Below, in pieces: positions 414 to 16,452 of a DNA stretch of 64,000 bases (positions within the stretch are counted from its first letter, which is position 1; each line of letters begins with the position of its first letter). The notes under the pieces are model-generated. The model saw only the letters and a list, made by a program, of their open reading frames with translations, was not told where the DNA came from and made no database searches. Both the position numbers and the translations under genes were made by a program. Source of the DNA: Pelomyxa schiedti. Lineage: Eukaryota > Protista > Evosea. Location: positions 1 to 64,000 of the forward strand of contig JAHLWZ010000417.1 of the NCBI GenBank assembly GCA_020536535.1, in the 5' to 3' direction.

Positions 414-424
414 TCCCACAATTT
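414..424 (+). promoter_or_regulatory. DUSE-like upstream element TCCCACAATTT of hairpin RNA copy 1
   Basis: Starts 64 bp before the G-run at 478; matches the Dictyostelium DUSE consensus WCCCAYAA. Confidence 0.7.
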
Positions 425-477
425 ACATTTTCAGGAAACAATTCTGTTTATCCCGCGCCGGTGAGTGGACAAGTTTT

Positions 478-576
478 GGGGGGGGAGTGAGAGGAGATTG
501 GGCAGATGCACGATAGTGTTGGTTGCGGACGACCCCTGGCTCGTGTTGTGCAGTCCCCCCATTGCCCTCATTCCCC
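478..576 (+). ncRNA. Candidate novel hairpin small RNA, subtype A, copy 1
   Basis: GGGGAGTGAG..CTCATTCCCC terminal stem, TGCACGAT/GTTGTGCA inner stem, GG-ACGA-CC apex; upstream element at fixed spacing. Confidence 0.7.
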
Positions 577-610
577 TGTCCCTAATTTAATTAAATGAAT
601 CACAAAACAC

Positions 611-613
<3 letters not shown>

Positions 614-643
<30 letters not shown>
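614..643. repeat. poly-T tract
   Basis: About 30 consecutive T. Confidence 0.9.
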
Positions 644-749
644 GGCTGCACGCCTACTCCAGAGTCGTGTTGGAATCCCAATGGGTATATTTTTGTTCTG
701 CGTGAGGTGTGACAAAGTGCATGAGGTGTGATAACTTGTAAAATTCCTC

Positions 750-1667
750 CAAAACTGGCCAGGTCATAGGGCGCCTTCACACATTTCACAGGATGTGGCC
801 TTGAGGGGGTTGATAAAGGTGCAACTGGGACAGGGCTTTCCTTTTGGAGCAGCCGTTTGTGTTGTTGGGGGGGGAGGTGGCTTGGGCATTGGTGTGCTGG
901 ATAGACCGGTTCCTGTTTGTGATTGATTGTTATTTGGGAGTGGATGTTCCATGGTTTTGTGGTTACCTTCAAATGCAAGTGCTCTTTTGGTGGTTGCCAC
1001 CAGTGGAACACCACCGAGCTCTTCCATAATTGTGGGATCATCTTCATCAAGCTAGTTGGGATGTGAGTCAAACGTTTGATGAGAAGTCTGTACCTCAGCC
1101 ACTGTGATTGTGCTGGTCTGAGTGACTTTGTTCTCTCCAAGGGTGCCTGTTTTCAGTTCGGTGGTTTTCCGTGTTATGGGATTAACAAATGTGAGCCGTT
1201 GCCTCACTGGCTCGATTTCCTTGTGAGTTTGTCAAAAAAAAGGTTTCTCAAGAGGAAAAGGAACCATCTCCTGAAGAATGAGCAGTCTCAATTCCGATAC
1301 TGGAGTTGTGGAACTCACTTTTATCCTTTTCACTGGACTTGTTATGCATGATGAGAACTTTAAAAAGCTTACTTGGTTGTGAGAGCCAAAGTCTTGAACC
1401 TGAAGCTTTTTTTTTTCTTTTTTCACAAACAAAAAAACTGGGCACGCAGGGAGTACCTTTAGTTACTTCGAGGTACTCATCCACAAAGTTAAACTTCTCA
1501 ACCATACTTTCCTGAGCCGATTGAGAAACACACTCCTCACACAGATCCGGGGTCAGAGTGTAGTCAACTTGGCTTCCATTCCAGTATGATGAGTAGTTTC
1601 TGTTTGTATTGATTCGGAGAACTATCTTGGAGCCTTCTTTCAGGGAGTACCTGGTATGGGATCTCAG
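750..1667 (-). pseudogene. Duplicated 3' end of the USP48-like gene (UBL plus RanBP2-type zinc finger), cut at the assembly gap
   Basis: Diverged copy of ~16438-17418; ends KPCPSCTFINPLKATSCEMCEGAL* (stop at 764). Confidence 0.7.
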
Positions 1668-1909
1668 NNNNNNNNNNNNNNNNNNNNNNNNNNNNNNNNN
1701 NNNNNNNNNNNNNNNNNNNNNNNNNNNNNNNNNNNNNNNNNNNNNNNNNNNNNNNNNNNNNNNNNNNCTGAGATCCCATACCAGGTACTCCCTGAAAGAA
1801 GGCTCCAAGATAGTTCTCCGAATCAATACAAACAGAAACTACTCATCATACTGGAATGGAAGCCAAGTTGACTACACTCTGACCCCGGGTCAGGGTGAGG
1901 AGTGTGTTT
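1526..1909. repeat. Inverted repeat (~130 bp arms) centred on the 100-N gap at 1668-1767
   Basis: 1768-1888 is the reverse complement of ~1547-1667; the ORF track gives the same peptide on both strands. Confidence 0.85.
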
Positions 1910-1916
1910 GTCATCC

Positions 1917-1927
1917 TCCCACAATTT
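1917..1927 (+). promoter_or_regulatory. DUSE-like element of copy 2
   Basis: TCCCACAATTT 64 bp before the G-run at 1981. Confidence 0.7.
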
Positions 1928-1980
1928 AGTTCTGAGGAAGAAAGAACCCTTTTTTTATCGGGAATGATGAGAGACATTTT

Positions 1981-2082
1981 GGGGGGAGGGTGAGAGGAGA
2001 TTGGGCTGATGTATGATCGTGTTGGTTGCGGATATCCCCTGGCTCGTGTTGTGCATTTCCCCATTGCCCTCACTCAAACCCC
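1981..2082 (+). ncRNA. Candidate novel hairpin small RNA, subtype B, copy 2
   Basis: Same core as subtype A, with CTGATGTA, a GG-ATAT-CC apex and GCATTTCCCC; the C>T change in the 5' arm keeps a G-U pair. Confidence 0.7.
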
Positions 2083-2185
2083 AAATCAAATCATTAACTA
2101 AATAATTTTTTTGCACAAAATATGGGTTTATTTTACTGAGATACAGTGTGACTATGTGTGTTGTACAAGGAGCCTCAGAGAGGCT

Positions 2186-5100
2186 TCAAAATTGGGGGGT
2201 GTTGGAAGAAGAAGGAACGAGGGGTGTGGAGGGAGCTGGTGGTGTGAGTTGCTGCTCGTTCATAACACTACTGACAGGGATAGTGCTGGGAGTTGTTGTG
2301 GTTGTGGTTGTGGTTGTTATTGGTGGGTCTGGCTGTACGTCGACCACTGCTTCATCCTCCGCTCTGCCGGCAAAGGAATCCCGGCGTTGCAGGGGTGTTT
2401 CTCTTGGAGAGTACAATCCAAGCTTGGTGTCAAAATACAGTTTCATTAACAGCTGGTAGTGTTTGTGCCATTTACGCTGTGGCCATTTGACAAGAATGCC
2501 GTCGATAACGATGGTAGCAGGGGCACTCAAGGTCAATAAGACCCATGAGTACCACGGAATCTGAGTGACTTTGGCAAGGTTATCTTGTACTGCCACAGAA
2601 ACAACAGAAAATGCTATCTGAGCAATGCACGCACAGATGGAGGCTATAACCCATGAGCGGCATCTGCTTCTTCTTTTTGCCATGTGCCACACAGCAAGGG
2701 AAGGATGAGAATAGGAGGCAGTCAAGGCAACTGCACACCAGACCAATAGCAACATAACCATGTTTTGTGCATAAAGCCTGGAGCATTTGAATTCAAAGGT
2801 GTCGTACCAAATTGTCTCTGAGCTACTGGAACTCGTACTGGCACTGACTTCTGGGAACCCGAACCCGAATAAAGGCTTCCACCCCATCCCCCATAGTGGT
2901 TCGAGAGTGATCAGAAAGAGAGCGACTGCACAGAATATCACTGGCACACCGACAATGACGGCATGTCTAATATTGCGCAGAACAACTTGGGGATTGATGT
3001 AGTTTTTTGGAGACATCTGGGACATAGTCTTCTGCGGAATATGAATAGCCATCAAACTGAAGGCCAACATCGGCCACAGTAGAAGCTCGAGCCACAATAT
3101 TTGGTATCCAGTTAGGGGCTCCGGAACTAGGAGCATGACAGCTAATAGGTCTACAGAAAGACAAATAAGGCAAAGGACAAACATAGCATGCATTGTCTGT
3201 GTTGTGTTACGCAGTATATGCCTTCCTTCTTTAATTAGTGTCAGAAGAACATCAAGCGGTGTATCGCAGTGCATGACAAATGAGCAGGGCAGGCATGTAA
3301 TATCCGCCGATAGTGATCCTGTAGTCCTGAACTGCGTGAATCGCTCTGAGGTTAACCTAGGGAAAGGTGTAGATGCTGCACCGCTTTGCGATAACTTGGG
3401 CATGGTACTGGCGGTTGGTGGACTACTTGAATAATGCCCATCATCAGGTTCGTCTGAAGGAACCCATTGCGAAGGAAGTGGCTGAATTGCTGCAGCAACA
3501 TCAGCTTGGACATATGATGGGGTGCTGTTCATGTTCAAAGCACTCCCGACACAAAGGACTACTTCTCCGTTCTCTTGCAGGATTTTAATCATTTCCCTCT
3601 TGGATTCAGGGGTGCACTCGGCAAAAATGGGCACCAGAAGAGGTACGTTGTCAATGTTTTCGATATGATGTCTGATAGCTCCAATTCCTCGGGGAAGTTT
3701 TGAAGCACCTTCCATAAAAATACTATCATTTGGTCCTGGGTCACGAAGAGATATAATGTAGTTCCATGTTGTATCCAGTCCCATTTGTTGTGCAAACAGA
3801 GTTGATCTGATTTGGTTTTCGTCACTGAAGTACCTAAAACGTACGCCTGCTTTCTGCAATCCCTGTACAAATTGTGGTGTTCCACTTTTAGGTTCTGCAC
3901 GTAACGAAACCATAGCAAGAAAAATTTGCCCTTGTGTCAGCAATTTGTCTTTATCTGTTTGAGTGGTCTCATGTGCTTGCTTGTTACTGTTTTCACTGCT
4001 TGAGCTAGGCGAGTCTTTTATGGCTTTCTTCATTCTGGCTGGCTTTTTGTCATTTGGTGTGATAGATTCGCCATCGGTGTTCTTTTTGGAATGGGCTTTC
4101 TTCTTTTCATGATCACGTTTTTTTTTCTCATGGTCTCCATTCTTCTCATCGACTTGGTGACTGGGATCATTTTGAAATCCAGATCTTTTGTCGTAAGATT
4201 TGGGTTCTGTGCCTTCACTGGGGATTTCGTTGGACTTATGAGAACCACAATAAAACTCTATAGACGAAGGGGATTGCTTTGGTAGAAGAGGAAAAGAGCT
4301 ATTTAAAGATAGTTGGCCAGACTCTAAATTGATTGTCAGGGAGTCGTCTTCACCTGAGGGTGGAACTCCTTTCAAAATCAGCCCCTTGACAAGTCTGGAA
4401 CATTGTGAGAATGCATCATGCACATAGAGTAGAGGAAATTACTGGTAATCTCTAGAGTGCTCATTAAGACAGTCCGGGCCTGAATTGACTTCAGGAAGAG
4501 TAGTCAAGTGCCCTAACATCCATCGTTCCTTTTTTTTGATGAGTTTGTATGCAAACCCAACACAGTAAAATGTCTCGTGTAGTCTCTCAAACTCTGCTAG
4601 GATGGCACTCTTGTTAGCTGCAGTGAGTCGGCATATTTTATTTTGTTCATTCCAGTATTGAGTGCAATGTTGCAGTATGAACGGAACATTGCCCTTCGTG
4701 AAAACTTGGAAGCTATCCTGCCCTGAGTCACCAGCTACAGCATAGACCTGAGAAAACATGTAGTATGGAACTCCTCCATTTTGCATAGGAGCATATGCAT
4801 GAATGTCTTTAACCGGCTTGAAGTGTTCAAGTCCAAAGTTGTCAAGAACTTCATCCTTGAATCCAATTGCTTCGTGTAATCTGCACATGCAAGGCGTGTA
4901 GGGTCGTGAGAAATTAGCAAGCAGGGATACAAGTACTCTCTTCCATCTATTCATATTACCAACACCCGTAACAGGGTGCTTTTTACGGTGCCTGCAATTC
5001 CGTTTGTTTAGCAATAAATTCAAGCCTAGAGCCTTGAGCCATCTCAAATAGACTTGCCAGTTTGGGTCAGTGAATTCCAATTTTCCTTTGGCTGTTGAGT

Positions 5101-6558
5101 CAGAGCTTTGGAGACTCAAACTCATCCCTCCATTGTTAAACAAGTAAACTTGCTCCGGCCTTGACATAGGTTCTACAAGTGTACCGTCCTTATCCATACA
5201 TACAAGAGCCGTCACAGCTCCCAGGGATTGGGCTAGAGGTGAAGTTCGTTGAAGCACGGGATTTGTGTCAAAAAGGAGAGCCCAGAAAAAGTATACCACC
5301 TTTCTCCATGGAACAACTGCCCGTGCACGCTTCCCAACACCTTTCTCATAATCGTGCATGCTAATTCCAAAATCAGGTGCTGCAGGGGCAGATGCAGCTC
5401 CACTTTCTGCTGGTTTGGTTGCACCAGCCAAGTTACTCATGCTTTCCTTCTTTACTAGACCAACACTATTTTGTTGCACATCAACTAATGCAAGGATCCG
5501 AGCATTGCCATAACTCTCAATAAATGTCCAAAGTACGTGAGGAAGTGCAATTGGTAGCAGGGCTAGCATAATATGGGCAGGGCGTGCTAAGACAATCTCA
5601 CTCAAAACGTGACCTTCTTGCAAGGAGTACCGCACAACGTTTATGGCAATAGAAATAGGCAGAGCAATCCACATCACCATCGCAACAAATATGAGCGTGA
5701 ATGCACGATGCTTACCAAGACGCGATCGTGGGCGAATGCTGGGAGCTTGCAGGGCTAATTCAAGCTGCTTACGTGCAGGAGATTCATCTACAATATACTG
5801 TGCAATTGTAAGACGTGGAGTATTACACCTAAGGGGTGTCAACCTCAGTAAGCCATTCTTGCTCAGTAAGTGGAGAATGTGGCTCCGTGTTCTGCCTCTC
5901 TGCAACAGGAGTGGCTTTGGCCGGAAGTGGTGCACCTTGGGGCACCAGAATTGCATCACCAGTAACAAGCAAGTTTTGAGGAACAAAACGCCATACGCCG
6001 TCACGCCGAGTTAAAACCTGTATGATATGGTAGTTAACAACCAGAGATGCGAAGGGAAAAAAAAAAAAAAATTAGTTCAAGCCTCACCTCATGGCCCACT
6101 TCTAGCAAATTGATTCTTTCACAATCGGGGCTCCTCAGATGTGCCCTGGCCCGTCTCACAACCACCATGTGTCTCAATATTCTGTCCTTATAAGCCACTA
6201 GAATATCCAAAGCCAAAAATGCACCCGCGATAGTTGTCTCCATTGCATACTCAGAACAATACCACCAGTACTTCGTATTGGTCTCGCTTTGCTCAGGGGG
6301 TCCCAAATCTTGCTCCGGCAACATGCTACTGATAAAAGCAAGCGCCAGAAGAACGACTGCCACCAAAATCGCCTCAAATCGCAAATTGCGAAGTATGTGA
6401 AGTACGGTTGCTGTCAAACAATGCCGGTTTCGAATGTCACGCTCCCTCTCGTCCAACGCCCTCTCTAACTCCTCGATCAGTGCCCTGTTGTCCCTCGATT
6501 TATAGGTAGATCTAGATCCCAGTATCCCCACCCCCGCCGACGTAGTGGGCTCCGTCAT
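2186..6558 (-). CDS. TMEM94: Transmembrane protein 94 (P-type ATPase-like), multi-exon
   Basis: Family motifs GVRFRYFS, AQQMGLDTTWNYIISL, KLPRGIGAIRHHIENIDNVPLLV, ENGEVVLCVGSALN, LYFDTKLGLYSP and CMDKDGTL; multiple TM helices. Confidence 0.9.
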
Positions 6559-6748
6559 CTCTCTTATTGGTTTTTTTATTGTTTAATTATGTACCGATAC
6601 GAAGCGCTTTTTGCCGGCTTCGTTCGTTTTTTTTTTGGTTTTTCACATCGTCTTCGTCAAGATCTGTTATCGGCGAACAAAACGAACAAAAGGAGATCTC
6701 CGGAATTTCACCAGGGTATCGGTCCGGTCGGATCTTTCAGTCACAATC

Positions 6749-7545
6749 TCAGGCGTATCTTCTGACTTGGTCGAGGGTGTTTCGTGGCTTGTGTGTATTG
6801 ACCGTGGCGTCGTGGGTCGGGTAGCCCAGTGCGATAATCACGTCTATTTTGGTGGACGCCGGCAATTTGAGGGCCGTTTTGATGCCGGCTTCTGAGAACC
6901 AACCTATCCAACAGGTACCAAGTCCCAACTCAGTAGCCTGAAGTGTAAGGTGGTCACAAGCTATTCCAATATCTTGCAGTGTTTGTTTGTCATGATCCAT
7001 CAAAGGGGAGTGAGTTATACCTATGAGGTTGTACTGAACACTTCGCAGCCATCCACCAAGGCGAGCAGCGTAGTTGGATACTTCGGTAACGCATACAATA
7101 ATAACCGGTGCAGTTTTGGCGAATTTCCCAGTGACTCCATGTACACCGGAGAAGGCCGCATCGGCAACGGCATCCTTTTTCGTGGCTTTGTATTGGTTAC
7201 GGTACACTTAAACAAATCAACTGGGAGTAGTTGCCGGTATTAATAACTATACGTTCCGCTACACATATATAGAGAAATGGAGAAATACTTTCAAAGGCTG
7301 CGTATCAACAACTATGAAGGACCACGGCTGTGAGTTACACGCAGAAGGAGCCACTCTGGCAGCATCCAAACACTATAACATCTTAAGTAATGGTACACAC
7401 CCAGTGACACTGAGAAAAAGAAGCGAAAAACCTTGTCAATTAACTCACGTGGTACCGGGGTGCTTTTGTACTCACGACAACTTCTCCTTGTCAAAATCAA
7501 CTGCTTGAATGCCGATTCGTTTTCATCACTAGCAACACTCACCAT
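6749..7545 (-). CDS. Nitroreductase-family FMN oxidoreductase, intron-containing
   Basis: RRSCREY, AARVAPSACNSQPWSF (across exons), DIGIACDHLTLQATELGLGTCWIGWF, IALGYP. Confidence 0.9.
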
Positions 7546-7589
7546 CTCGCGTGGTTAAAAACACAACAAAACAAAAATATTATTGGGTT

Positions 7590-7681
7590 GAGTGAGGGCA
7601 ATGGGGGGACTGCACAACACGAGCCAGGGGTCGTCCGCAACCAACACGATCGTGCATCTGCCCAATCGCCTCTCACTCCCC
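7590..7681 (-). ncRNA. Candidate hairpin small RNA, subtype A, copy 3
   Basis: Reverse complement of the subtype A core, with one change (GAGGCGATT) in an unpaired region. Confidence 0.7.
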
Positions 7682-7734
7682 GAAAACCTTTGGGATCTCG
7701 CCGAAACAAAAAGGATATTTTTTTCGGAAAAAGA

Positions 7735-7745
7735 AAATTGTGGGA
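7735..7745 (-). promoter_or_regulatory. DUSE-like element of copy 3
   Basis: AAATTGTGGGA on +, 64 bp from the G-run start at 7681. Confidence 0.7.
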
Positions 7746-7853
7746 TCACGAAAGTGTTTTGAGATGGTCGTGAAGAGGCGTGTGTCCAGACGCCTCTTCA
7801 CGACCTCCGCACAGTCACATTATTTTGATCTCCACAAACAAAATGGATAGATT

Positions 7854-10800
7854 TTACTCCTCAATGTTGAGCTTCTTGACCTTGGGAGAGGGACCAGCTG
7901 GTGCTGCCTGCTCAGCCACGAGTTTCGAGAGATCTTCCTCTCCAACACGTTTGTTGGTGCCTGTGTTTGAATGAAGGGGCAGAGGAGGTATAAGGAACCC
8001 ATCCTTATCTCTTGTGAGTGTGATAGGAGTGGCGCTTCTAGGAGCACCGCAACTTCGCTGCGAGGGTTGCAGGACAGCACCCGTGGTTGGGGTGTTGCTG
8101 TGGTTTCTCTTCCTGGGAACAGTGTGAGAACGCGTTCTTGGTTTCTTCTGTGTTGGAGGGACTGCTTCGGGAAAGACTAAAGTTGAGCCCTGAAGGTGAG
8201 GAGTTCCATAGTTGGGGGATCCCAGGTCTCGAGATATCTTGCTTAATAGACAAGCTGCTTTTCGCCTAAATTCCACCACACCTGCTTGATCAGGGTGCCT
8301 ATCAAGTACTGCTTGGCCACCATCATGGAAAAACTCGTACAGCTTGGGCACAATGGTTTCATAGGAGCAGATATCCACAAGCCAACCAAAAAGGGATGGC
8401 AACCCTGTTGCGGCCTCGTCCATGCTGAAATACTTGCTTGACAAACTCAGATCGACGAACACAGCATCAGATAGCATCTGTACAGTCAAGAAGTTATCAA
8501 CATACTCAGCAATCGTATCTGCGAGATAGTCGTCATCATCACCGTTGTAAATGGTGCTCAACAGATAAAGTGTTACAGGCCACACGTTTCTTGCTTTTAG
8601 AAGGGCCAGCTCCAGGTCAAGACCAGGGAGTGAAAGCAATGCATTAGCCACCGGAGTGATGACACCTTGCAATCCCAGAATATGCTTATTTAACTTCCTA
8701 TATCCAATTGCAAAGCAGTCTGAACCCCCTTTTTTTTGGACTGGCCGTAACTTCAAGAGAGCTTCAAAAAAGATGACGGGGTACTACTGGATCAGGTTCC
8801 AGGTGAGAAGGTTGTTCTGGTCCAACCACAGGAACGCATCCCCACTGCAACCCTTCCTTAGCAACTCCCAAAGTACCACGTTCATCTTGAACCCAGGGTC
8901 GCCGGTTTGTGGATTCCCTGCTATCTGTTCTCTCACAAACGGGAGTAAGGCATCAGCCACCTTGAAAGACTTTGGTGGCACCAAGTAATGGCAAATCGAG
9001 TCTTCCTTCATTGATGCAAGAACATCCCTTGGTACTCCAATGAAGTCCTCTGACACCTTGTGAAAGTGGTGCAGAACTACTGGTGTCAACGAAGAAATAA
9101 GCAACTGTGATAAAATTGCACTTATCTCAGCCTTGAATTCCGGTTGTCGGATAAGCAAATTGAAGACGGCGTCGTTGTTGCGTGCGCAAGCGGAGTTGAG
9201 GAGTCTCTGAACTGTGTCACCAGGCAGCGGCGCGGTGTGCTTTCGCCAACGCACAAGTATTTCCTCGAAATAAAGAGCGGCCTCAGGGGTGTTGTGCCTC
9301 GCGATGTTGCATAAGAGGTTCGGGAGATTTTCTTGGAGTTCATCATCATCATCCCCTTGGGCGACCTCCCAGCTGAGAATCTGTTTCAACGTGCCCCACA
9401 TTCCAGCAAGCGCCGCAGACAACGCGATCGTGGACTTCACGAACGGGGGCCATTTGTGCGCTTCTAACTCCACTGGGGTTTGGATTTGCGGTGAGTCCCA
9501 GCGCCCTGGGTCGGCGGCGACGATGTTTCGGATCGCCTTGCAAGAAGTGCGAAAGTTTTTCTCTGTCGTGCAAGCTGATTTCAGCACCGGTGTGCTGAAG
9601 TTCCTCAGGACTTGGACCGGCATCCTTGGCACTGCATTCAAAAGCAGTTGGAACACTTCTGTGTGTCCGCCCGCTGCTGCGCTGCAGAAGGCACTCGTCT
9701 TGACTGTATGGGTGACCTCGTCGTAAACTAAGCGCTGGGCTGCTGACGAGTGCGCCAATATGCCCTCAATCAACGGCACAGCTCCTGTGAAACACGCGAT
9801 TTCAAGCAGCTCCCCTATTTGCTCGGTATCCTCGACTTGAGTGCACACAATAAGCGCTGTGACCAGCTGCCTCGTTCGTAGTTCAAGCTGCAATACTTCC
9901 TCTTGGTTCTTTGCTTTGAGCATTGACTGACTCGCAACGGAAATTCCCATGCAAATAGCCACGCGGAGGTTCTTGTGACTCATATTCTGGACTCCAATCC
10001 AATCACGGCAACTCGCGGAAGGCAACGCAGGTGTGATAGAGACATCCCTCTGCCACGCATCAAGAAATTCGCTCTGACCATGGGCAATGGCGTAAAGAAA
10101 CGCACCTGTGGAAAGTTGTCAGTGACACAACCAAGGGCAGCTAAATGCATAGAAACCTGGTGTGGCGCTAGGTAAGCAGTGAAACCTGGATTGGTACATT
10201 GCAAGCAAACACTTGACTGGCCAGTTTTGGGGCTCCATGTGTGGCGCACACATTGATCATGTTGGAGATGCTGCCGACTCGACTTTGGAGCCACAGTATA
10301 GCCTTGCCCAGCCCAAAGGGATAGAATACTTCTGCCATCTTTACTACGAACATGAGCTGATCCTTTTTGTAGTGCATCAGGTGCTCAACTTCGCTTGTGG
10401 TCCTCCATTGTGGAGAATTCCTTTGCCGCTTGCAGTGGCAGAATGCCTCAGTAACATCTGTGAGCCTCTGTTTTCTATCTTGCTTCCCGAAAAGCGTTCG
10501 GTATACAATTCGCCACATCGTATCAATTTGAAAGAGAGAGTATGACCAAAATCCGCAGTTCCTTCCCCCTTACGACCAGCTCTCTTCTGATTTGTGTTTA
10601 TTGTGAATCCGAGTTGCTTTTGCAAACTACACACCCATCATTATCAGTCTGGACCACTGTTGTCAGCACGGCCAGTGATTCCGCGGCACCCACAACAGAA
10701 CCTGGTGAGACCGCTATTCCAACGGTTGTGCTTCTGTTTATTTTATTGCGTTCGTATTTGTTTCTTAGTTATGTTTGCCTTTCGACGTGTTCATTCATGT

Positions 10801-10891
10801 TAATTGGCTTGTGTATTTTATCAATTGCGGCAATTGAACCATACGCAGTCCCCTGCGTCGGCGTCTCAACGCCGCCGTCGTTTGGGTTCAT
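7854..10891 (-). pseudogene. Degenerate ankyrin-repeat protein, paralogue A, with one in-frame TAG at 8784-8786
   Basis: Collinear with the 12577-15686 gene (AFCSAAAGGHTEVFQLLL); reads CAG TAG TAC where the paralogue has CAG TAC; the frame continues after the stop. Confidence 0.7.
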
Positions 10892-11112
10892 AGTTTGTGG
10901 TTCCACACTACGCACGTCCGGCAAAGCGTGTCTTTGTTGGAATGGAAAAGGAAGGAACGGCAACCAAATTTAGCCTTCTCACTCTTTCTGATCGGTTAGC
11001 AGGTGCTGCCAACTCTCCCAACCCTACCTGGGACCGCTGAACAACCGAACAACCGCGACAATGGTTGTGTCCTTCCCTATTTGCACCAAACACCACTCTG
11101 ACCACCCCCCAG

Positions 11113-11123
11113 TCCCACAATTT
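11113..11123 (+). promoter_or_regulatory. DUSE-like element of copy 4
   Basis: TCCCACAATTT 64 bp before the G-run at 11177. Confidence 0.7.
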
Positions 11124-11176
11124 ACATTTTCAGGAAACAATTCTGTTTTATCCCGCCCCGGGGAGCCGAAAATTTT

Positions 11177-11276
11177 GGGGGGGGAGTGAGAGGAGATTGG
11201 GCAGATGCACGATCGTGTTGGTTGCGGACGACCCCTGGCTCGTGTTGTGCAGTCCCCCCATTGCCCTCATTCCCCC
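11177..11276 (+). ncRNA. Candidate hairpin small RNA, subtype A, copy 4
   Basis: Subtype A consensus core with terminal stem. Confidence 0.7.
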
Positions 11277-11692
11277 TCCATAATTAAAACCATAAAAATA
11301 ATTTTTTTTTTTCTCTCCTATTTTAAAATACTTTTTTGAACAGTTTCACACCGAGGTAAATAGGAACACCAATAGTGACTGCAGCCACACCACCAACGAC
11401 TGTGGCAGTCCCAAAACTGGCCAGGTCGTAGGGCACCATCACACATTTCACAGGATGTGGCCTTGAGGGGATTGATAAAGGTGCAATGGGAGTGGATGAT
11501 GTTCCATGGTTTTGTGGGTACCTTCAAAAGCAAGTGCTCTTTTGGTGGTTGAGACCAGTGGACCCCTCGTTCCTTCTTCTTCCAACACCCCCCAATTTTG
11601 AAGCCTCTCTGAGCCTCCTTGTACAACACACATTGTCACATTGTATCTCAGTGAAATAAACCAAAAAAATTATTTAGTTAATGATTTGATTT

Positions 11693-11792
11693 GGGGTTTG
11701 AGTGAGGGCAATGGGGAAATGCACAACACGAGCCAGGGGATATCCGCAACCAACACGATCGTACATCAGCCCAATCTCCTCTCACCCTCCCC
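11693..11792 (-). ncRNA. Candidate hairpin small RNA, subtype B, copy 5
   Basis: Reverse complement of the subtype B core, intact within decayed flanking DNA. Confidence 0.7.
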
Positions 11793-11847
11793 AGATTCAT
11801 ATTCGCATCATTCCCGATAAAAAAAGGGTAATTTTTTCCGCGGAAGT

Positions 11848-11858
11848 AAATTGTGGGA
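11848..11858 (-). promoter_or_regulatory. DUSE-like element of copy 5
   Basis: AAATTGTGGGA, 66 bp from the G-run and 73 bp from the GTGAG core, as in copies 1, 2 and 4. Confidence 0.7.
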
Positions 11859-12206
11859 CCGAAATGGTGTACTTGTGTTCGATGAGGTTGATCTAGGTGG
11901 TGGAATTGGCGAGTTTCGCAAGAGCTTCCCCGTTGATTGAAATGTCCTTGGCACGGCATTCAAAAGTAGCTGGAACACCTCTGTGTGTCCACTCGCTGCT
12001 GCACTCGCCTTGCGTGTATGGGTGGCTTCATCATGATGGGGTTGGGCTCCTGGCGAGAGTGTAGTACTCTCTAGTAGTACTGTTTCAATCAACACATTCC
12101 GGGGTCAGTGCGTAGGCAATTTTGCTTCCATTCCCGTAGTTTCTGTTTGTGTTGATTCGGAGGCCTGTGGTTAAACCCAAAACAAAAATATTATTATTAT
12201 TGGGTC

Positions 12207-12299
12207 GAGTGAGGGCAATGGGGAAATGCACCACACGAGCCAGGGGATATCCGCAACCAACACGATCGTACATCAGCCCAATCTCCTCTCACCCTCCCC
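12207..12299 (-). ncRNA. Candidate hairpin small RNA, subtype B, copy 6
   Basis: Subtype B core with one T>G change (GTGGTGCA). Confidence 0.7.
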
Positions 12300-12352
12300 A
12301 GATTTATCTTCATCATTCCCGACAAAAAAAGGGTCTTTTTTTCGGGGGAAGT

Positions 12353-12363
12353 AAATTGTGGGA
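12353..12363 (-). promoter_or_regulatory. DUSE-like element of copy 6
   Basis: AAATTGTGGGA, 64 bp from the G-run start at 12299. Confidence 0.7.
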
Positions 12364-12576
12364 TGGAAATGGTGTACCCCGCAGTCAGCCTAGTCGCGTG
12401 TGAGTTGTGTGTGGTTCCCTTTTCGGTGGTGTTGGTCTCTGTGGGACCTTCGAGGTGGTGTGGGTTCTCTTGGTAGCAAATTGTGATGCCGATCCAAATT
12501 TGGAGGCTGGCCATTTCTTTATCATTCCAAACTAAGACACGCTTTGCCGGACGTGCGTAGTGTGGAACCACCAGCC

Positions 12577-15500
12577 ATGAACCCAAACGACGGCGGCGTT
12601 GAGACGCCGACGCAGGGGACTGCGTATGTTAAACTGCAATTGAAAAAAATACGAGCAATTTAAATGAATGCAGTGCATTCAAGAAGCCAACAAACACAAA
12701 CACAATAAAAAAACAGAAGCACGGAGGCTAGTTCTTGTGGAAGTGGCACGGGAAACTCACTGGTTGTTGTTGGTGAGGCTGAGGCGACTACAGTATCGAC
12801 AAAAGTTCAGGCTGATAATGGGTGTGTTTGACTTGAATCACATAGAAGAAAGTAACTCAAATCAGAATCGCTGGTTGTGAGGGGAAAGAACAGCAGAGCA
12901 AACGGGCTTTTGGTCATACTCTCTTTCAAATTGATACGATGTGGCGAATTGTATACAGAACGCTTTTCGGGAAGCAAGACAGAAAACGGAAGCTCACAGA
13001 CATTCCAGAGGCATTCTGTGACTGCAAGAGGAAAAGGCAATCTCTCCAATGGAGGACAACATGGGCAGTTGCACACCTGATGCACTTTAAAAGTGAGCAG
13101 CTCATGTTCGTTGTGAAGATGGCAGAAGTGTTCTATCCTTTTAGCCTCGGCAAGGCGATCAAGTGGCTCCAAAGTCGAGTGGGGAGTATCTCCAACATGA
13201 TCAACGTGTGTGCCACACATGGGGCCCCGAACGTGGCCATTGGGTGCTTGCTGCCAATGTATCAATCCAGGTTTCACTGTCTTCCGAGTGTCACACCAGG
13301 TTTTTCTGCATTTTTTCTTCGTACTTGTTATTTTATGACTGACAAGTAAGTTTCCACAGGTGCATTTCTTTACGCCATTGCCCATGGACAGTCTGAGTTC
13401 CTTGATGCGTGGCAGAGGGAGGTCTCGGTCCTGCCTGCAGATGGCCTTGAGGACATGGGCGTAAAGAAGAATACGAATCACAAGAACCTCCGTGTCGCTA
13501 TTTGCATGGGAATTTCTATTGCGAGTCAATCAATGCTCGAGGCAAAAAACAAAGAAGAAGAAGAAGAAGTATCACAGCTGGAAGTGCGAACGACGCAGCT
13601 GGTCTCCACTCTTATGGTATGCACCCCGGTCAATGAGGACATCCAGCAAGTTGGAGAGTTGCTTGAAATTGCGAGTTTCACAGGAGCTTCCCCGTTGATT
13701 GAAACAATACTAGCACTCCCGCAAGGAGCCCAATTCCTTCACGATGAAGCCACCCATGCACTCAAGGCGAGTGCTTTCTGCAGTGCAGCAGCGGGTGGAC
13801 ACACAGAGGTGTTCCAACTGCTTTTGAATGCAGTGCCAAGGACGTCAACGTATTCCCTGACGAACTTCAGCACGTCGGTGCTAACATCAGCGTGCACTAC
13901 CGAGAAGAGCTTCGGTCGAACTTGCAAGGCGATCCTACGCATCGTAGCCGCTGATCCCTCACGCTGGGACAAAGCACAAATCCCAGAGGAGTTCTTGACG
14001 CGCAAATGGGCTCCTTTCGTGAAGTCCACGGTCGCGTCGGCTGCATCCCGTGCTGGGATGTGGGGCACAGTGAAAAAGATTCTCTGCCCCGAGTTCAGCG
14101 AAACCGATGAGGGCATCCAATCGAATCTCCCTGTCCTCTTGCACAACATTGCCAGGCGCAACGCCGATGATGTGGCTACACCTATTTTCGAGGAAATACT
14201 TGTACGTTGGCGAAAGCGCAACACGGCACCGCTGCCCAAAGACACTCTTTATGGGCTTCTCAACGCAGCATGCACTCGCAATAACGACGCCGTCTTCAAT
14301 TTGCTTGTCGCGCAGCCCGAGATCAGTGCCGACATCAACAGAGCCTTGTCAGAATTGCTTGTTTCCGCGTTGTCCCCAAACGTTCTGCACCACTTTCACA
14401 AGCTGTCAGAGGACTTAATTGGGATCCCCAAGGATGTTATTGCATCGATTGCAATGAAGGAAGGCTCGATTAGCCACTACTTGGTGCCACCAAAGACTTT
14501 CAAGGTGGCTGATGCTTTGCTGCCATTCATCAGGGAACAGGCCAAGGGCAATCCACAAACCGGCGACCCTGGGTTCAAGATGAACGTGGTGCTTTGGGAG
14601 TTGGTAAGGAAGGGTTGCAGTGGAGATGCGTTCCTGTGGTTGGACCAGAACAACCTCCTCACCTGGGACATGATCCAGTACCCCGTCATCTTCTTTCAAG
14701 CCCTCCTGAAGTTGCGGCCAGTGCCTAAAAAAGGGGGTTCAGATTGCTTTACCATTGGATACCGAAAGCTGAATAAACATATTCTAGGATTGCAAGGTGT
14801 CATTACTCCGGTAGCAAACTCACTGCTTTCACTCCCTGGCCTTGACTTGGAGATGGCACTTCTCAAAGCTCAAAATGTGTGGCCTGTCACGCTTTATCTG
14901 TTGAGCACCATTGACAGCGGTGACGATGACGACTACTATCTCGCTGATACGATTGCCGAGTATGTTGACAACTTCTTGACTGTACAGATGCTATCTGATG
15001 CTGTGTTCGTCGACCTGAGTTTGTCAGGAAAGTATTTCAGCATGGACGAGGTCACGACAGGGTTGCCATCCCTTTTTGACTGGCTTGTGGAAATCTGCTC
15101 CTATGAAACCATTGTGCCCAAGTTGTATGAGTTTTTCCATGACGGCGGTGGGGCAGTTCTTGCCAAACACCCCGATCGAGCAGGTGTTAAGGACTTCCAG
15201 CGAAAAGCGGCTTGTCTATTGGGAAGGATCTCTCGAGACCTTGGATCGCCTGGCTATGGAGTTCCTCACCTTCAGGGGGCTACTTTAGTCTTTCCTGGCG
15301 TTGTTAGTTGTCCAGCACAAAGGAAGCCCAAAAGGCGCTATCACGTAGCTCCCAGGAAAAGGAACCATAGCAATGCACCGGAAACAGGTGTTATACTTCC
15401 ACCCTCACAACGTGGTGGTGGTGGTGGTGGTGCTCCCAGCAGTGCCTCTGTTTCCACTCCTACCACACTCACAAGGGATAAGGATGGTTTCCTTATACCC

Positions 15501-15686
15501 CCTCTGCCCTCTGTCTTTCCCAAAAACCAGCAGTCCTCCAAAGAACCACCACCGGCAGCACTTTGTTCAAACACAGGCACCAACAAAAGTGGTGGAGAAA
15601 ATGATGATGACGACTTGGTAACTGAGACTCATGATGTGGCACCAACAGGCCCCTCTCCCAAAGTCCAGAGGCTCAACAATCCCTAA
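12577..15686 (+). CDS. Degenerate ankyrin-repeat protein, paralogue B (~950-1000 aa, 4 predicted exons)
   Basis: ATG at 12577 (MNPNDGG); in-frame GT-AG introns at ~12624-12716, ~12822-12865 and ~13290-13359; ankyrin-like AFLYAIAHGQSEFL and AFCSAAAGGHTEVFQLLL; terminal ORF of 743 aa. Confidence 0.8.
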
Positions 15687-15850
15687 AGGGCAAAAGAGAT
15701 GGTGTCGGGGGCCCGACAAAAATCAAAAATATGAAAATCAGACCTTTTTCACGAGTGAACTTGTGACCAAGTAGTCAGTCGGTCGTAGTGGCTTTGCAAT
15801 TCTAACACACATACGCCGAACGAGAACAGAAGTTGGTGGTTTGTCTTCCA

Positions 15851-15861
15851 TCCCACAATTT
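15851..15861 (+). promoter_or_regulatory. DUSE-like element of copy 7
   Basis: TCCCACAATTT 65 bp before the G-run at 15916. Confidence 0.7.
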
Positions 15862-15915
15862 AGTTCTGAGGAAGAAAGAACCCTTTTTTTATCGGGAATG
15901 ATGAAGAGACATTTT

Positions 15916-16017
15916 GGGGGGAGGGTGAGAGGAGATTGGGCTGATGTACGATCGTGTTGGTTGCGGATATCCCCTGGCTCGTGTTGTGCATTTCCCCATT
16001 GCCCTCACTCAAACCCC
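15916..16017 (+). ncRNA. Candidate hairpin small RNA, subtype B, copy 7
   Basis: Subtype B consensus core. Confidence 0.7.
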
Positions 16018-16452
16018 AAATCAATCAAACAATAAATAAAAATGCATAAATAATTTTTTTTGCTCCAATTCCTCCTCGATTTGGTATCGTGAACGCCATT
16101 GAGTTGGACGGAATGAATATATTAAGAGACATTGGTTATATATTTCTCTTTGAGTTGGATAGCACAATTTTTCTGTTAGGGGAAAATAGATTTTTCTCGT
16201 GAACAGCAGGGTTCTGGGCCCCCAGCAGTGCCCCTTGGGCAATGCTCGACAACACTCAGCAACACTACCACACACCCACGGGCAAGCAGGCCCTGTTGGT
16301 GAGATATCGAAAAAAAAAATTAAATTTCTCAGTCTTTTTTGACGGTAAAATTGTGTTATCCAACTCAAAGAGATATTATGTGGCAAACTTGGGAGTTCGT
16401 TGCTGGCCCCCTGGCATACATACAACTTTTTAAAATTCCAAAACTGGCCAGG

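What the first reader, a model, noticed from the sequence alone, without database searches (positions are those of the whole stretch)
414..15861. Invariant TCCCACAATTT at fixed spacing: a DUSE-like promoter outside dictyostelids
Seen in sequence: all seven copies have TCCCACAATTT starting 64, 64, 64, 64, 66, 64 and 65 bp before the 5' G-run, although the spacer sequence differs strongly between copies (compare 425-477 with 1928-1980). A T-rich run, often ending TTTATC, lies about 30 bp upstream of the RNA. Established knowledge: Dictyostelium snRNA, SRP and Class I RNA genes carry the DUSE (WCCCAYAA) about 60 nt upstream, and the plant USE has a TCCCAC core. Inference: an snRNA-type external promoter is conserved here and could be used to find other ncRNA genes in this genome. 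No T-run follows the hairpin directly, so the polymerase is unresolved.
Basis: partly seen in the sequence, partly recalled or inferred. Interest (0 to 1): 0.8.

Follow-up and report, generated by a model that had tools for sequence, protein, structure and literature searches.

The report
Amoeba small-RNA promoter element, Dictyostelium type
The repeated TCCCACAATTT is the upstream promoter element that this anaerobic amoeba (Pelomyxa schiedti) puts about 62-66 bases before its splicing, signal-recognition and other small RNA genes; that is the same element and spacing known from Dictyostelium, and here it drives seven copies of an unclassified hairpin RNA.

Summary
Observation confirmed: seven exact TCCCACAATTT copies lie 64-66 bp before the G-run of a ~95-nt hairpin.

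The genome's size and contig count equal the published Pelomyxa schiedti assembly (Archamoebae, not a dictyostelid).

The core NCCCAYAA lies 59-67 bp upstream of U1 (7/8), U2 (8/8), U4 (1/1), U5 (8/8) and U6 (8/8). It also precedes all six SRP genes. A W-rich/CG box sits near -30, and a SNAPC3 gene is present. This is a DUSE-type snRNA promoter outside Dictyostelia. DUSE papers in the library are all dictyostelid; one says such conservation was not expected.

The hairpin is a real RNA family: 23 model matches, a conserved duplex box (GGAGAUUGG / CCAUUGCC), and 18 of 33 pairs with compensatory changes. It matches no Rfam family. A T5+ run follows every evaluable copy 12-51 nt after the hairpin, with no T4 before it. 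That favours Pol III, but no TSS or expression data could be obtained.

Two limits apply. The 11-mer alone is a poor gene finder: 4 of 93 other sites fetched. The assembly gap at 1668-1767 sits in an artefactual foldback, but no motif-to-RNA interval crosses it.

The scan's first readers had already noted DUSE-like elements on other DNA of this genome.

The parts
414..424 (+). Upstream element (DUSE-type) of hairpin gene A_414
   Evidence: Exact 11-mer, 64 bp before the G-run.
447..455 (+). -30 box (TTTATCCCG) of A_414
   Evidence: T-rich run plus CG, 33 bp after the motif start.
478..583 (+). Hairpin RNA, subtype A
   Evidence: MFE -53.1 kcal/mol, z -3.47. Model match 485-573, 95.7 bits.
615..643 (+). 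T29 run, the first T4+ after the start (putative Pol III terminator)
1522..1913 (.). Foldback centred on the assembly gap 1668-1767; the join is not supported
   Evidence: Inverted repeat of 196 nt, 98% complementary. DNA contigs diverge at 1667, and 1707-1907 is nearly uncovered.
1917..1927 (+). Upstream element of hairpin gene B_1917
   Evidence: 64 bp.
1950..1962 (+). -30 box (TTTTTTTATCGGG)
1981..2082 (+). Hairpin RNA, subtype B
   Evidence: MFE -45.6 kcal/mol, z -2.33. Model match 1988-2075, 101.6 bits.
2106..2112 (+). T7 run
7735..7745 (-). Upstream element of A_7745
   Evidence: 64 bp.
7701..7712 (-). -30 box (TTTTTGTTTCGG)
7585..7681 (-). Hairpin RNA, subtype A (GGCGAUUGGG variant of the box)
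   Evidence: MFE -49.3 kcal/mol, z -4.11. Model match 7590-7678.
7573..7577 (-). T5 run
11113..11123 (+). Upstream element of A_11113
   Evidence: 64 bp.
11146..11155 (+). -30 box (TTTTATCCCG)
11177..11279 (+). Hairpin RNA, subtype A
   Evidence: Model match 11184-11272, 100.9 bits.
11302..11312 (+). T11 run
11848..11858 (-). Upstream element of B_11858
   Evidence: 66 bp.
11813..11825 (-). -30 box (TTTTTTTATCGGG)
11693..11792 (-). Hairpin RNA, subtype B
   Evidence: Model match 11700-11787, 104.1 bits.
11663..11669 (-). T7 run
12353..12363 (-). Upstream element of B_12363
   Evidence: 64 bp.
12318..12330 (-). -30 box (TTTTTTTGTCGGG)
12200..12299 (-). Hairpin RNA, subtype B
   Evidence: Model match 12207-12294, 100.7 bits.
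12184..12188 (-). T5 run
15851..15861 (+). Upstream element of B_15851
   Evidence: 65 bp.
15884..15896 (+). -30 box (TTTTTTTATCGGG)
15916..16017 (+). Hairpin RNA, subtype B
   Evidence: Model match 15923-16010, 104.1 bits.
16054..16061 (+). T8 run

Best explanation
TCCCACAATTT is one flavour of the upstream sequence element (core NCCCA[CT]AA) of the snRNA-type external promoter of Pelomyxa schiedti.

The element sits about 62-66 bp before the first transcribed base. It works with a second box near -30, a T/A-rich run followed by CG(A/G). It is most likely the binding site of the SNAPc complex, which then recruits Pol II or Pol III (inferred).

In sequence, spacing and gene set it equals the Dictyostelium DUSE: spliceosomal RNAs of both polymerase classes, SRP RNA and a multi-copy family of small stem RNAs.

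In this window the element drives seven paralogous genes of an unclassified RNA. This is a long imperfect hairpin of about 90-100 nt. Its lower stem carries a conserved duplex box (5' GGAGAUUGG, 3' CCAUUGCC), and its apical part varies.

Transcription probably starts at the G-run. It probably runs through a 12-51-nt A/C-rich trailer to an oligo-T terminator, giving primary transcripts of about 105-140 nt, made by Pol III.

Shown: motif, spacing, presence at the genome's canonical small-RNA genes, covarying hairpin, T-run statistics. Inferred: SNAPc binding, start site, polymerase, expression.
For: Motif and spacing.

The same core at the same distance:
- U6: 8/8 at -65 to -67
- U2: 8/8 at -59 to -64
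- U1: 7/8 at -61 to -65, plus one AACCATAA variant
- U5: 8/8 at -64 to -66
- U4: 1/1
- SRP: 6/6 carry it; the SRP 5' end lies about 65 bp after it in the copy I counted (L034)

Phylogenetic footprint among paralogues. The flanks of subtypes A and B are near-random, while the motif is invariant. Divergent subfamilies C, D and E on other contigs keep TCCCACAATT[TC] 64-69 bp before the model start.

The RNA is real:
- 23 model matches.
- 92.2% of cells are paired, against 52-60% when partners are slid.
- 18 of 33 pairs have changes on both sides; 0/500 shuffles reach the covariation score.
- The sense strand folds better than the antisense strand, mean -37.3 against -26.4 kcal/mol.

Pol III. The first T4+ run after the start is a T5+ run 12-51 nt past the hairpin in 21/21 evaluable genes, and none has an internal T4. 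U1 and U2 carry internal T4-T6 runs in 15 of 16 copies, and only 4/16 have a T5+ within 80 nt downstream. For U5 the figure is 1/8 within 60 nt.

A SNAPC3 homologue is encoded at C985.

Organism: assembly figures identical to PMC8887013; lineage.

DUSE definition and its use by both polymerases: PMC3188802, PMC7919456.
Against: - No expression or 5'-end evidence. The only RNA run offered is kept as contigs from a single-cell RNA-seq library. It covers the neighbouring spliced mRNA but not the hairpins.
- The 11-mer occurs 261 times in the genome against about 21-30 expected. Of the 93 other sites fetched, 89 have neither a recognised small RNA nor a family relative behind them. The 87 distinct ones show no positional signal, and only two of them match the -30 box pattern. 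The motif is therefore not sufficient, or it has other uses.
- Two family members (C2327, C253:48729) lack it.
- The T-box of the hairpin genes starts 33-34 bp after the motif, as in most Pol II U2 genes. In SRP and most U6 genes a T-run starts at +21 to +26. The A/C-rich trailers resemble the 3' flanks of U1, U2 and U5. Pol II with 3'-box processing is therefore not excluded.
- No other amoebozoan genome could be searched, so common descent with DUSE is inferred from likeness alone.
Confidence: 0.75

Rival explanations
1. The promoter reading is right, but the hairpin genes are transcribed by Pol II, like U1, U2 and U5. Their 3' ends would then be made at an A/C-rich 3' box in the trailer, and the oligo-T further on would be incidental or a fail-safe.
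For: The motif-to-T-box distance (+33/34) equals that of most U2 genes. The trailers (for example CAAATCAAATCA, CACAAAACACAAAA, CCACAAAACAAACA) resemble the A-rich flanks after U1, U2 and U5. The T-run never abuts the hairpin.
Against: A T5+ run is present in 21/21 genes within 51 nt, against 4/16 within 80 nt for U1 and U2 and 1/8 within 60 nt for U5. There is no T4 anywhere in the body or trailer, whereas all U2 and most U1 genes contain such runs. Two U6 copies also have the +33-35 T-box, so the spacing does not discriminate.
Confidence: 0.2
2. The invariance of the 11-mer is hitch-hiking. The seven copies are recent segmental duplicates, and the motif is simply part of the duplicated unit without a promoter role.
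For: The copies lie in duplicated cassettes in one 16-kb stretch. Within subtype B, spacer identity is 0.69-0.87.
Against: Between subtypes the spacer and the upstream flank are close to random while all 11 bases are kept. Distant subfamilies on five other contigs keep the element at the same distance. Unrelated genes (U1, U2, U4, U5, U6, SRP) have it at the same place.
Confidence: 0.03
3. The hairpin units are not RNA genes but a foldback or MITE-like DNA repeat. TCCCACAATTT would then be a general transcription-factor site, common in this genome, that happens to lie in the repeat.
For: A long inverted repeat structure. The 11-mer is about 10-fold over-represented genome-wide, mostly at sites without small-RNA architecture.
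Against: The structure is strand-specific, with many G-U pairs; the antisense strand folds about 11 kcal/mol worse. Compensatory changes keep the helix while the sequence changes. Motif, -30 box and oligo-T are always in the same orientation and spacing. There are no target-site duplications or terminal repeats beyond the hairpin itself.
Confidence: 0.04

Closest known systems
DUSE, the Dictyostelium upstream sequence element (PMC3188802, PMC7919456; PMC7919456 credits it to Hinas and Soderbom)
   Same: The position is about 60-63 bp before the start. It is used by spliceosomal RNA genes of both Pol II and Pol III. It also drives a multi-copy family of small RNAs whose ends form a stem beside a conserved motif and which often have oligo-T downstream.
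   Different: The organism is an archamoeba, not a dictyostelid. The first base is less restricted (G and C also occur). No TGTG box is present. PMC7919456 states that DUSE sequence and distance were not expected to be conserved outside Dictyostelia.
Plant snRNA promoter (USE with a TCCCAC core, plus TATA box; from my own knowledge, not checked in a paper here)
   Same: A shared TCCCAC core, a two-box external promoter, and use by both Pol II and Pol III.
   Different: The plant USE continues ...ATCG and lies nearer -70. In plants a 10-bp change in USE-TATA spacing sets the polymerase. Here a T-run starts at +21 to +26 in SRP and most U6 genes and at about +33 in most U2 genes, but two U6 copies break the rule, so the test is inconclusive.
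Metazoan PSE / SNAPc-dependent type 3 promoters (PMC9652321, PMC6004067, listed; only their abstracts were seen)
   Same: An external element about 55-65 bp upstream shared by Pol II and Pol III small-RNA genes. The genome encodes SNAPC3.
   Different: The sequence of the element differs. No distal enhancer was looked for. Binding was not tested.
Dictyostelium Class I RNAs
   Same: A multi-copy, partly clustered gene family, DUSE-driven. A terminal stem covaries between subfamilies, with a conserved sequence block next to it and a variable remainder. Oligo-T lies downstream.
   Different: Class I RNAs are 42-65 nt and carry CCUUACAGCAA. The Pelomyxa RNAs are 85-102 nt long hairpins with GGAGAUUGG/CCAUUGCC and lack that motif. 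No Rfam family matches.
Vault RNA
   Same: Size class, paired ends with a variable centre, several paralogues, a likely Pol III product. The genome encodes a TEP1-like TROVE protein and at least five loci with major-vault-protein repeats, but no Rfam-type vault RNA.
   Different: No sequence or model similarity. No internal A/B boxes were shown. Nothing links these RNAs to vaults.

Membership tests
DUSE-type promoter | Core [AT]CCCA[CT/AT]AA | tested here: met
   All 7 window copies have TCCCACAA. All 8 U6 copies have ACCCATAA. U1, U2 and U5 have mostly A or T, with some G or C, at the first base.
DUSE-type promoter | About 60-63 bp upstream of the RNA 5' end | tested here: met
   64-66 bp to the G-run. 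59-67 bp to the model starts of U1, U2, U5 and U6. True 5' ends are not mapped.
DUSE-type promoter | Shared by Pol II and Pol III small-RNA genes and by SRP RNA | tested here: met
   U1, U2, U4 and U5 have no terminator T-run. U6 and SRP end in T-runs. All carry the element.
DUSE-type promoter | Required for transcription | not testable with these tools
   Needs mutagenesis or expression data. Only contigs of one RNA run were available.
DUSE-type promoter | Host is a dictyostelid (as the element was defined) | tested here: not met
   The genome figures equal those of Pelomyxa schiedti, Archamoebae. It is therefore filed as 'DUSE-type', not as DUSE proper.
SNAPc-dependent promoter | SNAPc subunits encoded | tested here: met
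   SNAPC3 domain in exons at C985:18318-19430, 121.9 bits with its neighbours. Other subunits were not searched.
SNAPc-dependent promoter | SNAPc binds the element | not testable with these tools
   Needs EMSA or ChIP.
Plant-type USE/TATA promoter | A 10-bp difference in USE-TATA spacing between Pol II and Pol III genes | tested here: inconclusive
   A T-run starts at +21 to +26 in 6/6 SRP and most U6 genes, and at about +33 in most U2 genes (my reading of the printed sequences). U6 L001 and L003 have +33 to +35.
Pol III gene (type 3) | Oligo-T terminator, and no T4+ inside the transcribed part | tested here: met
   21/21 evaluable hairpin genes. Controls: U1/U2 4/16, U5 1/8.
Class I RNA (Dictyostelium) | Conserved 11-nt motif CCUUACAGCAA and length 42-65 nt | tested here: not met
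   The motif is absent from all 23 members, which are 85-102 nt long.
Vault RNA | Match to RF00006, or association with MVP/TEP1 | tested here: not met
   No RF00006 match in the genome at E <= 1. Association is not testable. MVP and TEP1 genes are present.
Y RNA | A Ro60 partner and the Ro-binding lower stem | tested here: not met
   The only TROVE locus found is TEP1-like (DUF5920, DUF4062; PDB match 'Telomerase protein component 1'). No Rfam match on the window at gathering scores, nor at E <= 10 on 11000-12500, which holds three copies.

The most novel reading that the evidence does not exclude
The hairpin family is the so far unknown RNA partner of a conserved ribonucleoprotein of this amoeba. 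The conserved duplex box GGAGAUUGG/CCAUUGCC would be the protein-binding site and the variable apex would be free to diverge. The best candidate is the vault particle. The genome has a TEP1-like protein and several loci with major-vault-protein repeats but no recognisable vault RNA. That would give the first vault RNA outside animals. Together with the shared DUSE-type promoter, it would suggest that DUSE-driven small stem RNAs such as Dictyostelium Class I RNAs go back to the common ancestor of Evosea.
Probability: 0.12. Interest if true: 0.75.

Novelty: new member of a known kind. Interest (0 to 1): 0.55.

Why it matters
DUSE has been treated as a dictyostelid feature. The main comparative study built its Class I RNA classifier on it and stated that neither its sequence nor its distance was expected to hold outside Dictyostelia (PMC7919456).

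Here the same core appears at the same distance before every class of canonical small RNA examined in an archamoeba. This points to an older origin of the element, at least at the base of Evosea. With the plant TCCCAC core in mind, it may reflect an even older SNAPc site.

In practice, the full architecture gives a usable signature for annotating the many orphan small RNAs of Pelomyxa and probably of Mastigamoeba and Entamoeba. That architecture is core, W-rich/CG box near -30, start at +62-66, and oligo-T or A-rich 3' flank.

It also defines a new hairpin RNA family with 23 model matches, strong covariation and no known function.

Tried and rejected
1. Rfam. No family reaches its gathering score in the window. 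At E <= 10 on 11000-12500 only weak miRNA and snoRNA look-alikes appear, at 13-19 bits against cut-offs of 45-160. tRNA scan: none.

2. Exact 11-mer as a gene finder. I fetched 93 further sites. Rfam finds only one U4 and one U2. Two more sites are hairpin relatives. The other 87 distinct sites show no positional signal and no common downstream family.

3. Relatives in metagenomes. A scan for the two-box pattern returned more than 120 stretches, about what chance gives by my rough estimate. The model scores all 80 loci returned at <= 27.4 bits, against >= 42.9 for the better Pelomyxa members. No cross-species evidence was obtained.

4. Expression and 5' ends. Only Logan contigs were served. 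The single RNA run has no contig on the hairpins, which is not evidence of absence for a single-cell RNA-seq library.

5. Exact-protein look-up of a window ORF to name the organism: nothing on record. Pfam on eight window ORFs gave only a cation-ATPase C-terminus.

6. Y-RNA idea: dropped, because the TROVE gene is TEP1-like. The TROVE gene was searched ORF piece by ORF piece, by reference.

7. Plant-style spacing rule for polymerase choice: suggestive but broken by two U6 copies.

8. The big protein searches, structure prediction and complex prediction were not used, because the question did not need them.

Full report
**Observation**

TCCCACAATTT occurs exactly seven times in the window: 414+, 1917+, 11113+, 15851+, 7745-, 11858- and 12363-. 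With one mismatch allowed there are 13 matches against 2.35 expected, and no shuffle reaches 13.

Each copy is followed by a conserved unit of about 95 nt that folds into a long imperfect hairpin.

Two subtypes exist. Subtype A is 414, 7745 and 11113. Subtype B is 1917, 11858, 12363 and 15851. Between subtypes the spacer is 0.38-0.58 identical and the 40 bp upstream 0.15-0.47, while the motif is invariant.

A T-rich run ending in ATC or GTC and then CG/GG begins 33 bp after the motif start.

The six one-mismatch matches have no such architecture behind them. Two of them (1027-, 16708-) lie in paralogous transcribed sequence; an RNA contig covers the first.

**The gap**

The gap at 1668-1767 is the centre of a foldback of 196 nt per arm: 1522-1717 against 1718-1913, 98% complementary.

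I laid the contigs of three DNA runs and one RNA run on 300-2300.
- Long DNA contigs (4.4-10.6 kb) leave the window's sequence at 1667 and run on into other sequence.
- Bins 1707-1907 have almost no depth.
- An mRNA contig on the minus strand (677-1652, introns of 40-51 nt) leaves at 1652, apparently at a splice site.

The published assembly was made from multiple-displacement-amplified single cells (PMC8887013), which is known to produce such chimeras. The two sides of the gap are therefore not shown to be continuous.

This does not affect any motif-to-RNA interval. It does leave the placement of copy B_1917 unverified, since its motif lies 4 bp beyond the foldback.

**Organism**

The window's genome has 52,367,397 bases in 5337 contigs. 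The Pelomyxa schiedti paper reports 52.4 Mb in 5337 scaffolds. Earlier follow-up notes of this scan gave the same name.

The lineage is Amoebozoa; Evosea; Archamoebae. This is outside Dictyostelia.

**The decisive test**

They have it.

| Gene class | Copies with the core | Position relative to the Rfam model start |
|---|---|---|
| U6 | 8/8 (ACCCATAA) | -65 to -67; genes end in T8-T11 |
| U2 | 8/8 ([TAG]CCCA[CT]AA) | -59 to -64 |
| U1 | 7/8, eighth has AACCATAA | -61 to -65 |
| U5 | 8/8 | -64 to -66 |
| U4 | 1/1, behind an exact 11-mer | not measured |
| U2 (further copy) | 1/1, behind an exact 11-mer | -61 |
| SRP | 6/6 ([AT]CCCATAAGTA) | see below |

For SRP the Rfam model start is misaligned. 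In the copy I counted (L034) the GGGGUUGG 5' end begins about 65 bp after the motif.

Near -30 all classes have a W-rich run followed by CG(A/G). Examples are TTTTCGAGG in U2 and U6, TAAAGAGCGA in U5 and TTTTTTTATCGGG in the hairpin genes.

The genome encodes a SNAPC3 homologue.

This is the Dictyostelium arrangement. DUSE, [AT]CCCA[AT]AA, lies about 63 bp upstream of spliceosomal and Class I/II RNA genes (PMC3188802). It is used by both Pol II and Pol III genes (PMC7919456).

[quoted passage not shown] In the held library the phrase 'Dictyostelium upstream sequence element' occurs only in four dictyostelid papers.

**The RNA behind the motif**

A BLAST-type search finds nine copies: seven here, plus C843 and C867. 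Among the other 11-mer sites, two divergent relatives appeared that share GGAGATTGGG and CCCATTGCC.

A covariance model built from these eleven sequences finds 23 matches in the genome. One is a low-complexity false hit. A search of the fetched loci also gives 23 matches, and every one carries both boxes.

The subfamilies are:
- A and B: nine copies.
- C and C2: on C253.
- D and D2: on C306, C990 (three in tandem), C596 (two) and C2327.
- E: on C867.

Basal stems differ but stay complementary, for example GUGAGAG/CUCAC, GGGAGAG/CUCUCCC, GAGUGUGG/CCACACUC and GGAAG/CUUCC. The apical parts are unrelated in sequence yet still hairpins.

On the model-fitted alignment:
- 92.2% of cells pair, against 52-60% when partners are slid.
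- 18 of 33 pairs have changes on both sides.
- No shuffle reaches the covariation score. The alignment is fitted to the structure, which inflates these numbers somewhat.

The sense strand folds about 11 kcal/mol better than the antisense strand, so the structure is at the RNA level.

Most members keep TCCCACAATT[TC] 64-69 bp before the model start. Two have variants (TACCACAATTT, TCCCACGATTT), and two lack it.

No Rfam family fits. The Class I motif is absent.

**Polymerase**

In 21 of 21 evaluable family members the first run of four or more T after the predicted start is a T5-T29 run, 12-51 nt beyond the hairpin. No T4 occurs inside the body or the trailer.

The Pol II controls behave differently:
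- All eight U2 copies and seven of eight U1 copies contain internal T4-T6 runs.
- Only 4 of 16 have a T5+ within 80 nt downstream.
- For U5 the figure is 1 of 8 within 60 nt.

This favours Pol III, with a 3' trailer that may later be trimmed.

Against it:
- The T-box spacing of the hairpin genes (+33/34) is that of most U2 genes, whereas SRP and most U6 genes have a T-run at +21 to +26.
- The trailers are A/C-rich, like the flanks after U1, U2 and U5.

I put Pol III at roughly two to one over Pol II.

**Limits of the motif as a search tool**

The 11-mer occurs 261 times in the genome, against 21 for the reversed control. My own estimate from base composition is about 30.

Of the 100 places listed, 12 are promoters of small-RNA genes: seven in the window, C843, two relatives, one U2 and one U4. 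The remaining 87 distinct sites show no -30 box, no positional signal and no shared downstream sequence. Some lie in coding sequence.

The excess is unexplained. The element may have other uses, for instance at protein-coding genes.

**What the RNA might do**

This part is inference. A conserved, slightly irregular duplex in the lower stem, with a free-to-vary apex, is what protein-bound small RNAs such as Y, vault and Class I RNAs look like.

- The single TROVE locus is TEP1-like rather than Ro60-like.
- Major-vault-protein repeats occur at five or more loci.
- No Rfam-type vault RNA is found.

The family is therefore one candidate for the missing vault RNA. Nothing links it to vaults, and first readers have noted several other orphan RNAs with the same promoter in this genome.

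**Verdict**

Two corrections apply: Pol III is likely, and the 11-mer alone is not specific.

It is a new member of a known kind of promoter. The RNA it drives is unclassified. The scan's first readers had already flagged DUSE-like elements elsewhere in this genome.

Noticed in passing
window 1522-1913: A foldback of 196 nt per arm (98% complementary) is centred on the assembly gap. DNA contigs diverge at 1667 into other sequence. It is probably an artefact of amplification or scaffolding in this single-cell assembly.
   Followed up: yes
window 677-1652 (minus strand): A spliced mRNA contig shows three very short introns (1219-1263, 1333-1372 and 1406-1456; 40-51 nt; GT..AG on the minus strand). 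A paralogue near 16708 shares the coding near-match TCCCACAATTA.
   Followed up: partly
genome-wide (G000); sample L040-L132: TCCCACAATTT occurs 261 times against about 21-30 expected. About 87 of the 93 extra sites fetched have no small-RNA architecture behind them. The reason for the excess is unexplained.
   Followed up: partly
L001-L008, L034-L039, L018-L025 (U6, SRP, U2 promoters): SRP (6/6) and most U6 genes have a T-run starting 21-26 bp after the element. In most U2 genes the T-run of the W-rich/CG box starts about 33 bp after it (my reading of the printed sequences). This is a 10-bp difference like the plant rule for polymerase choice, but two U6 copies break it.
   Followed up: partly
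G000:C807:26546-28779 (L155): A TEP1-like gene: TROVE, then DUF5920 and DUF4062, with a PDB match to 'Telomerase protein component 1'. Major-vault-protein repeats occur at C810, C516, C352, C518, C850 and C93. No Rfam vault RNA is found in the genome.
   Followed up: partly
G000:C990:23736-24390 and C596:98931-99245: There are tandem arrays of three and two hairpin-family genes (subfamilies D and D2), each with its own upstream element and oligo-T. D-type genes share a conserved 16-nt trailer, CCTAACATTTCACAGG.
   Followed up: partly
L144 (C2327:1489-1588) and L152 (C253:48629-48728): Two family members of different subfamilies lack the DUSE-type element. They share another upstream sequence instead (CTGAATAAAAAAAAC..CCAGAC..ACGAAAA), which could be a replaced promoter or an insertion.
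   Followed up: no
L026-L033 (U1 loci): U1 genes come with three different 5' arms (ATACTTACCTG, ATACATACCTG, ATACGTACCTG). This agrees with earlier notes of this scan on variant U1s in this genome.
   Followed up: no
window 2186-6004 (minus strand): Two adjacent long ORFs of 745 and 521 aa. The first carries a cation-ATPase C-terminal domain, so this is probably one P-type ATPase gene.
   Followed up: no
L040 (G000:C4:269085+): An exact 11-mer is followed by ATATTACGA at about +40. It is a possible further orphan small-RNA gene and was not analysed.
   Followed up: no
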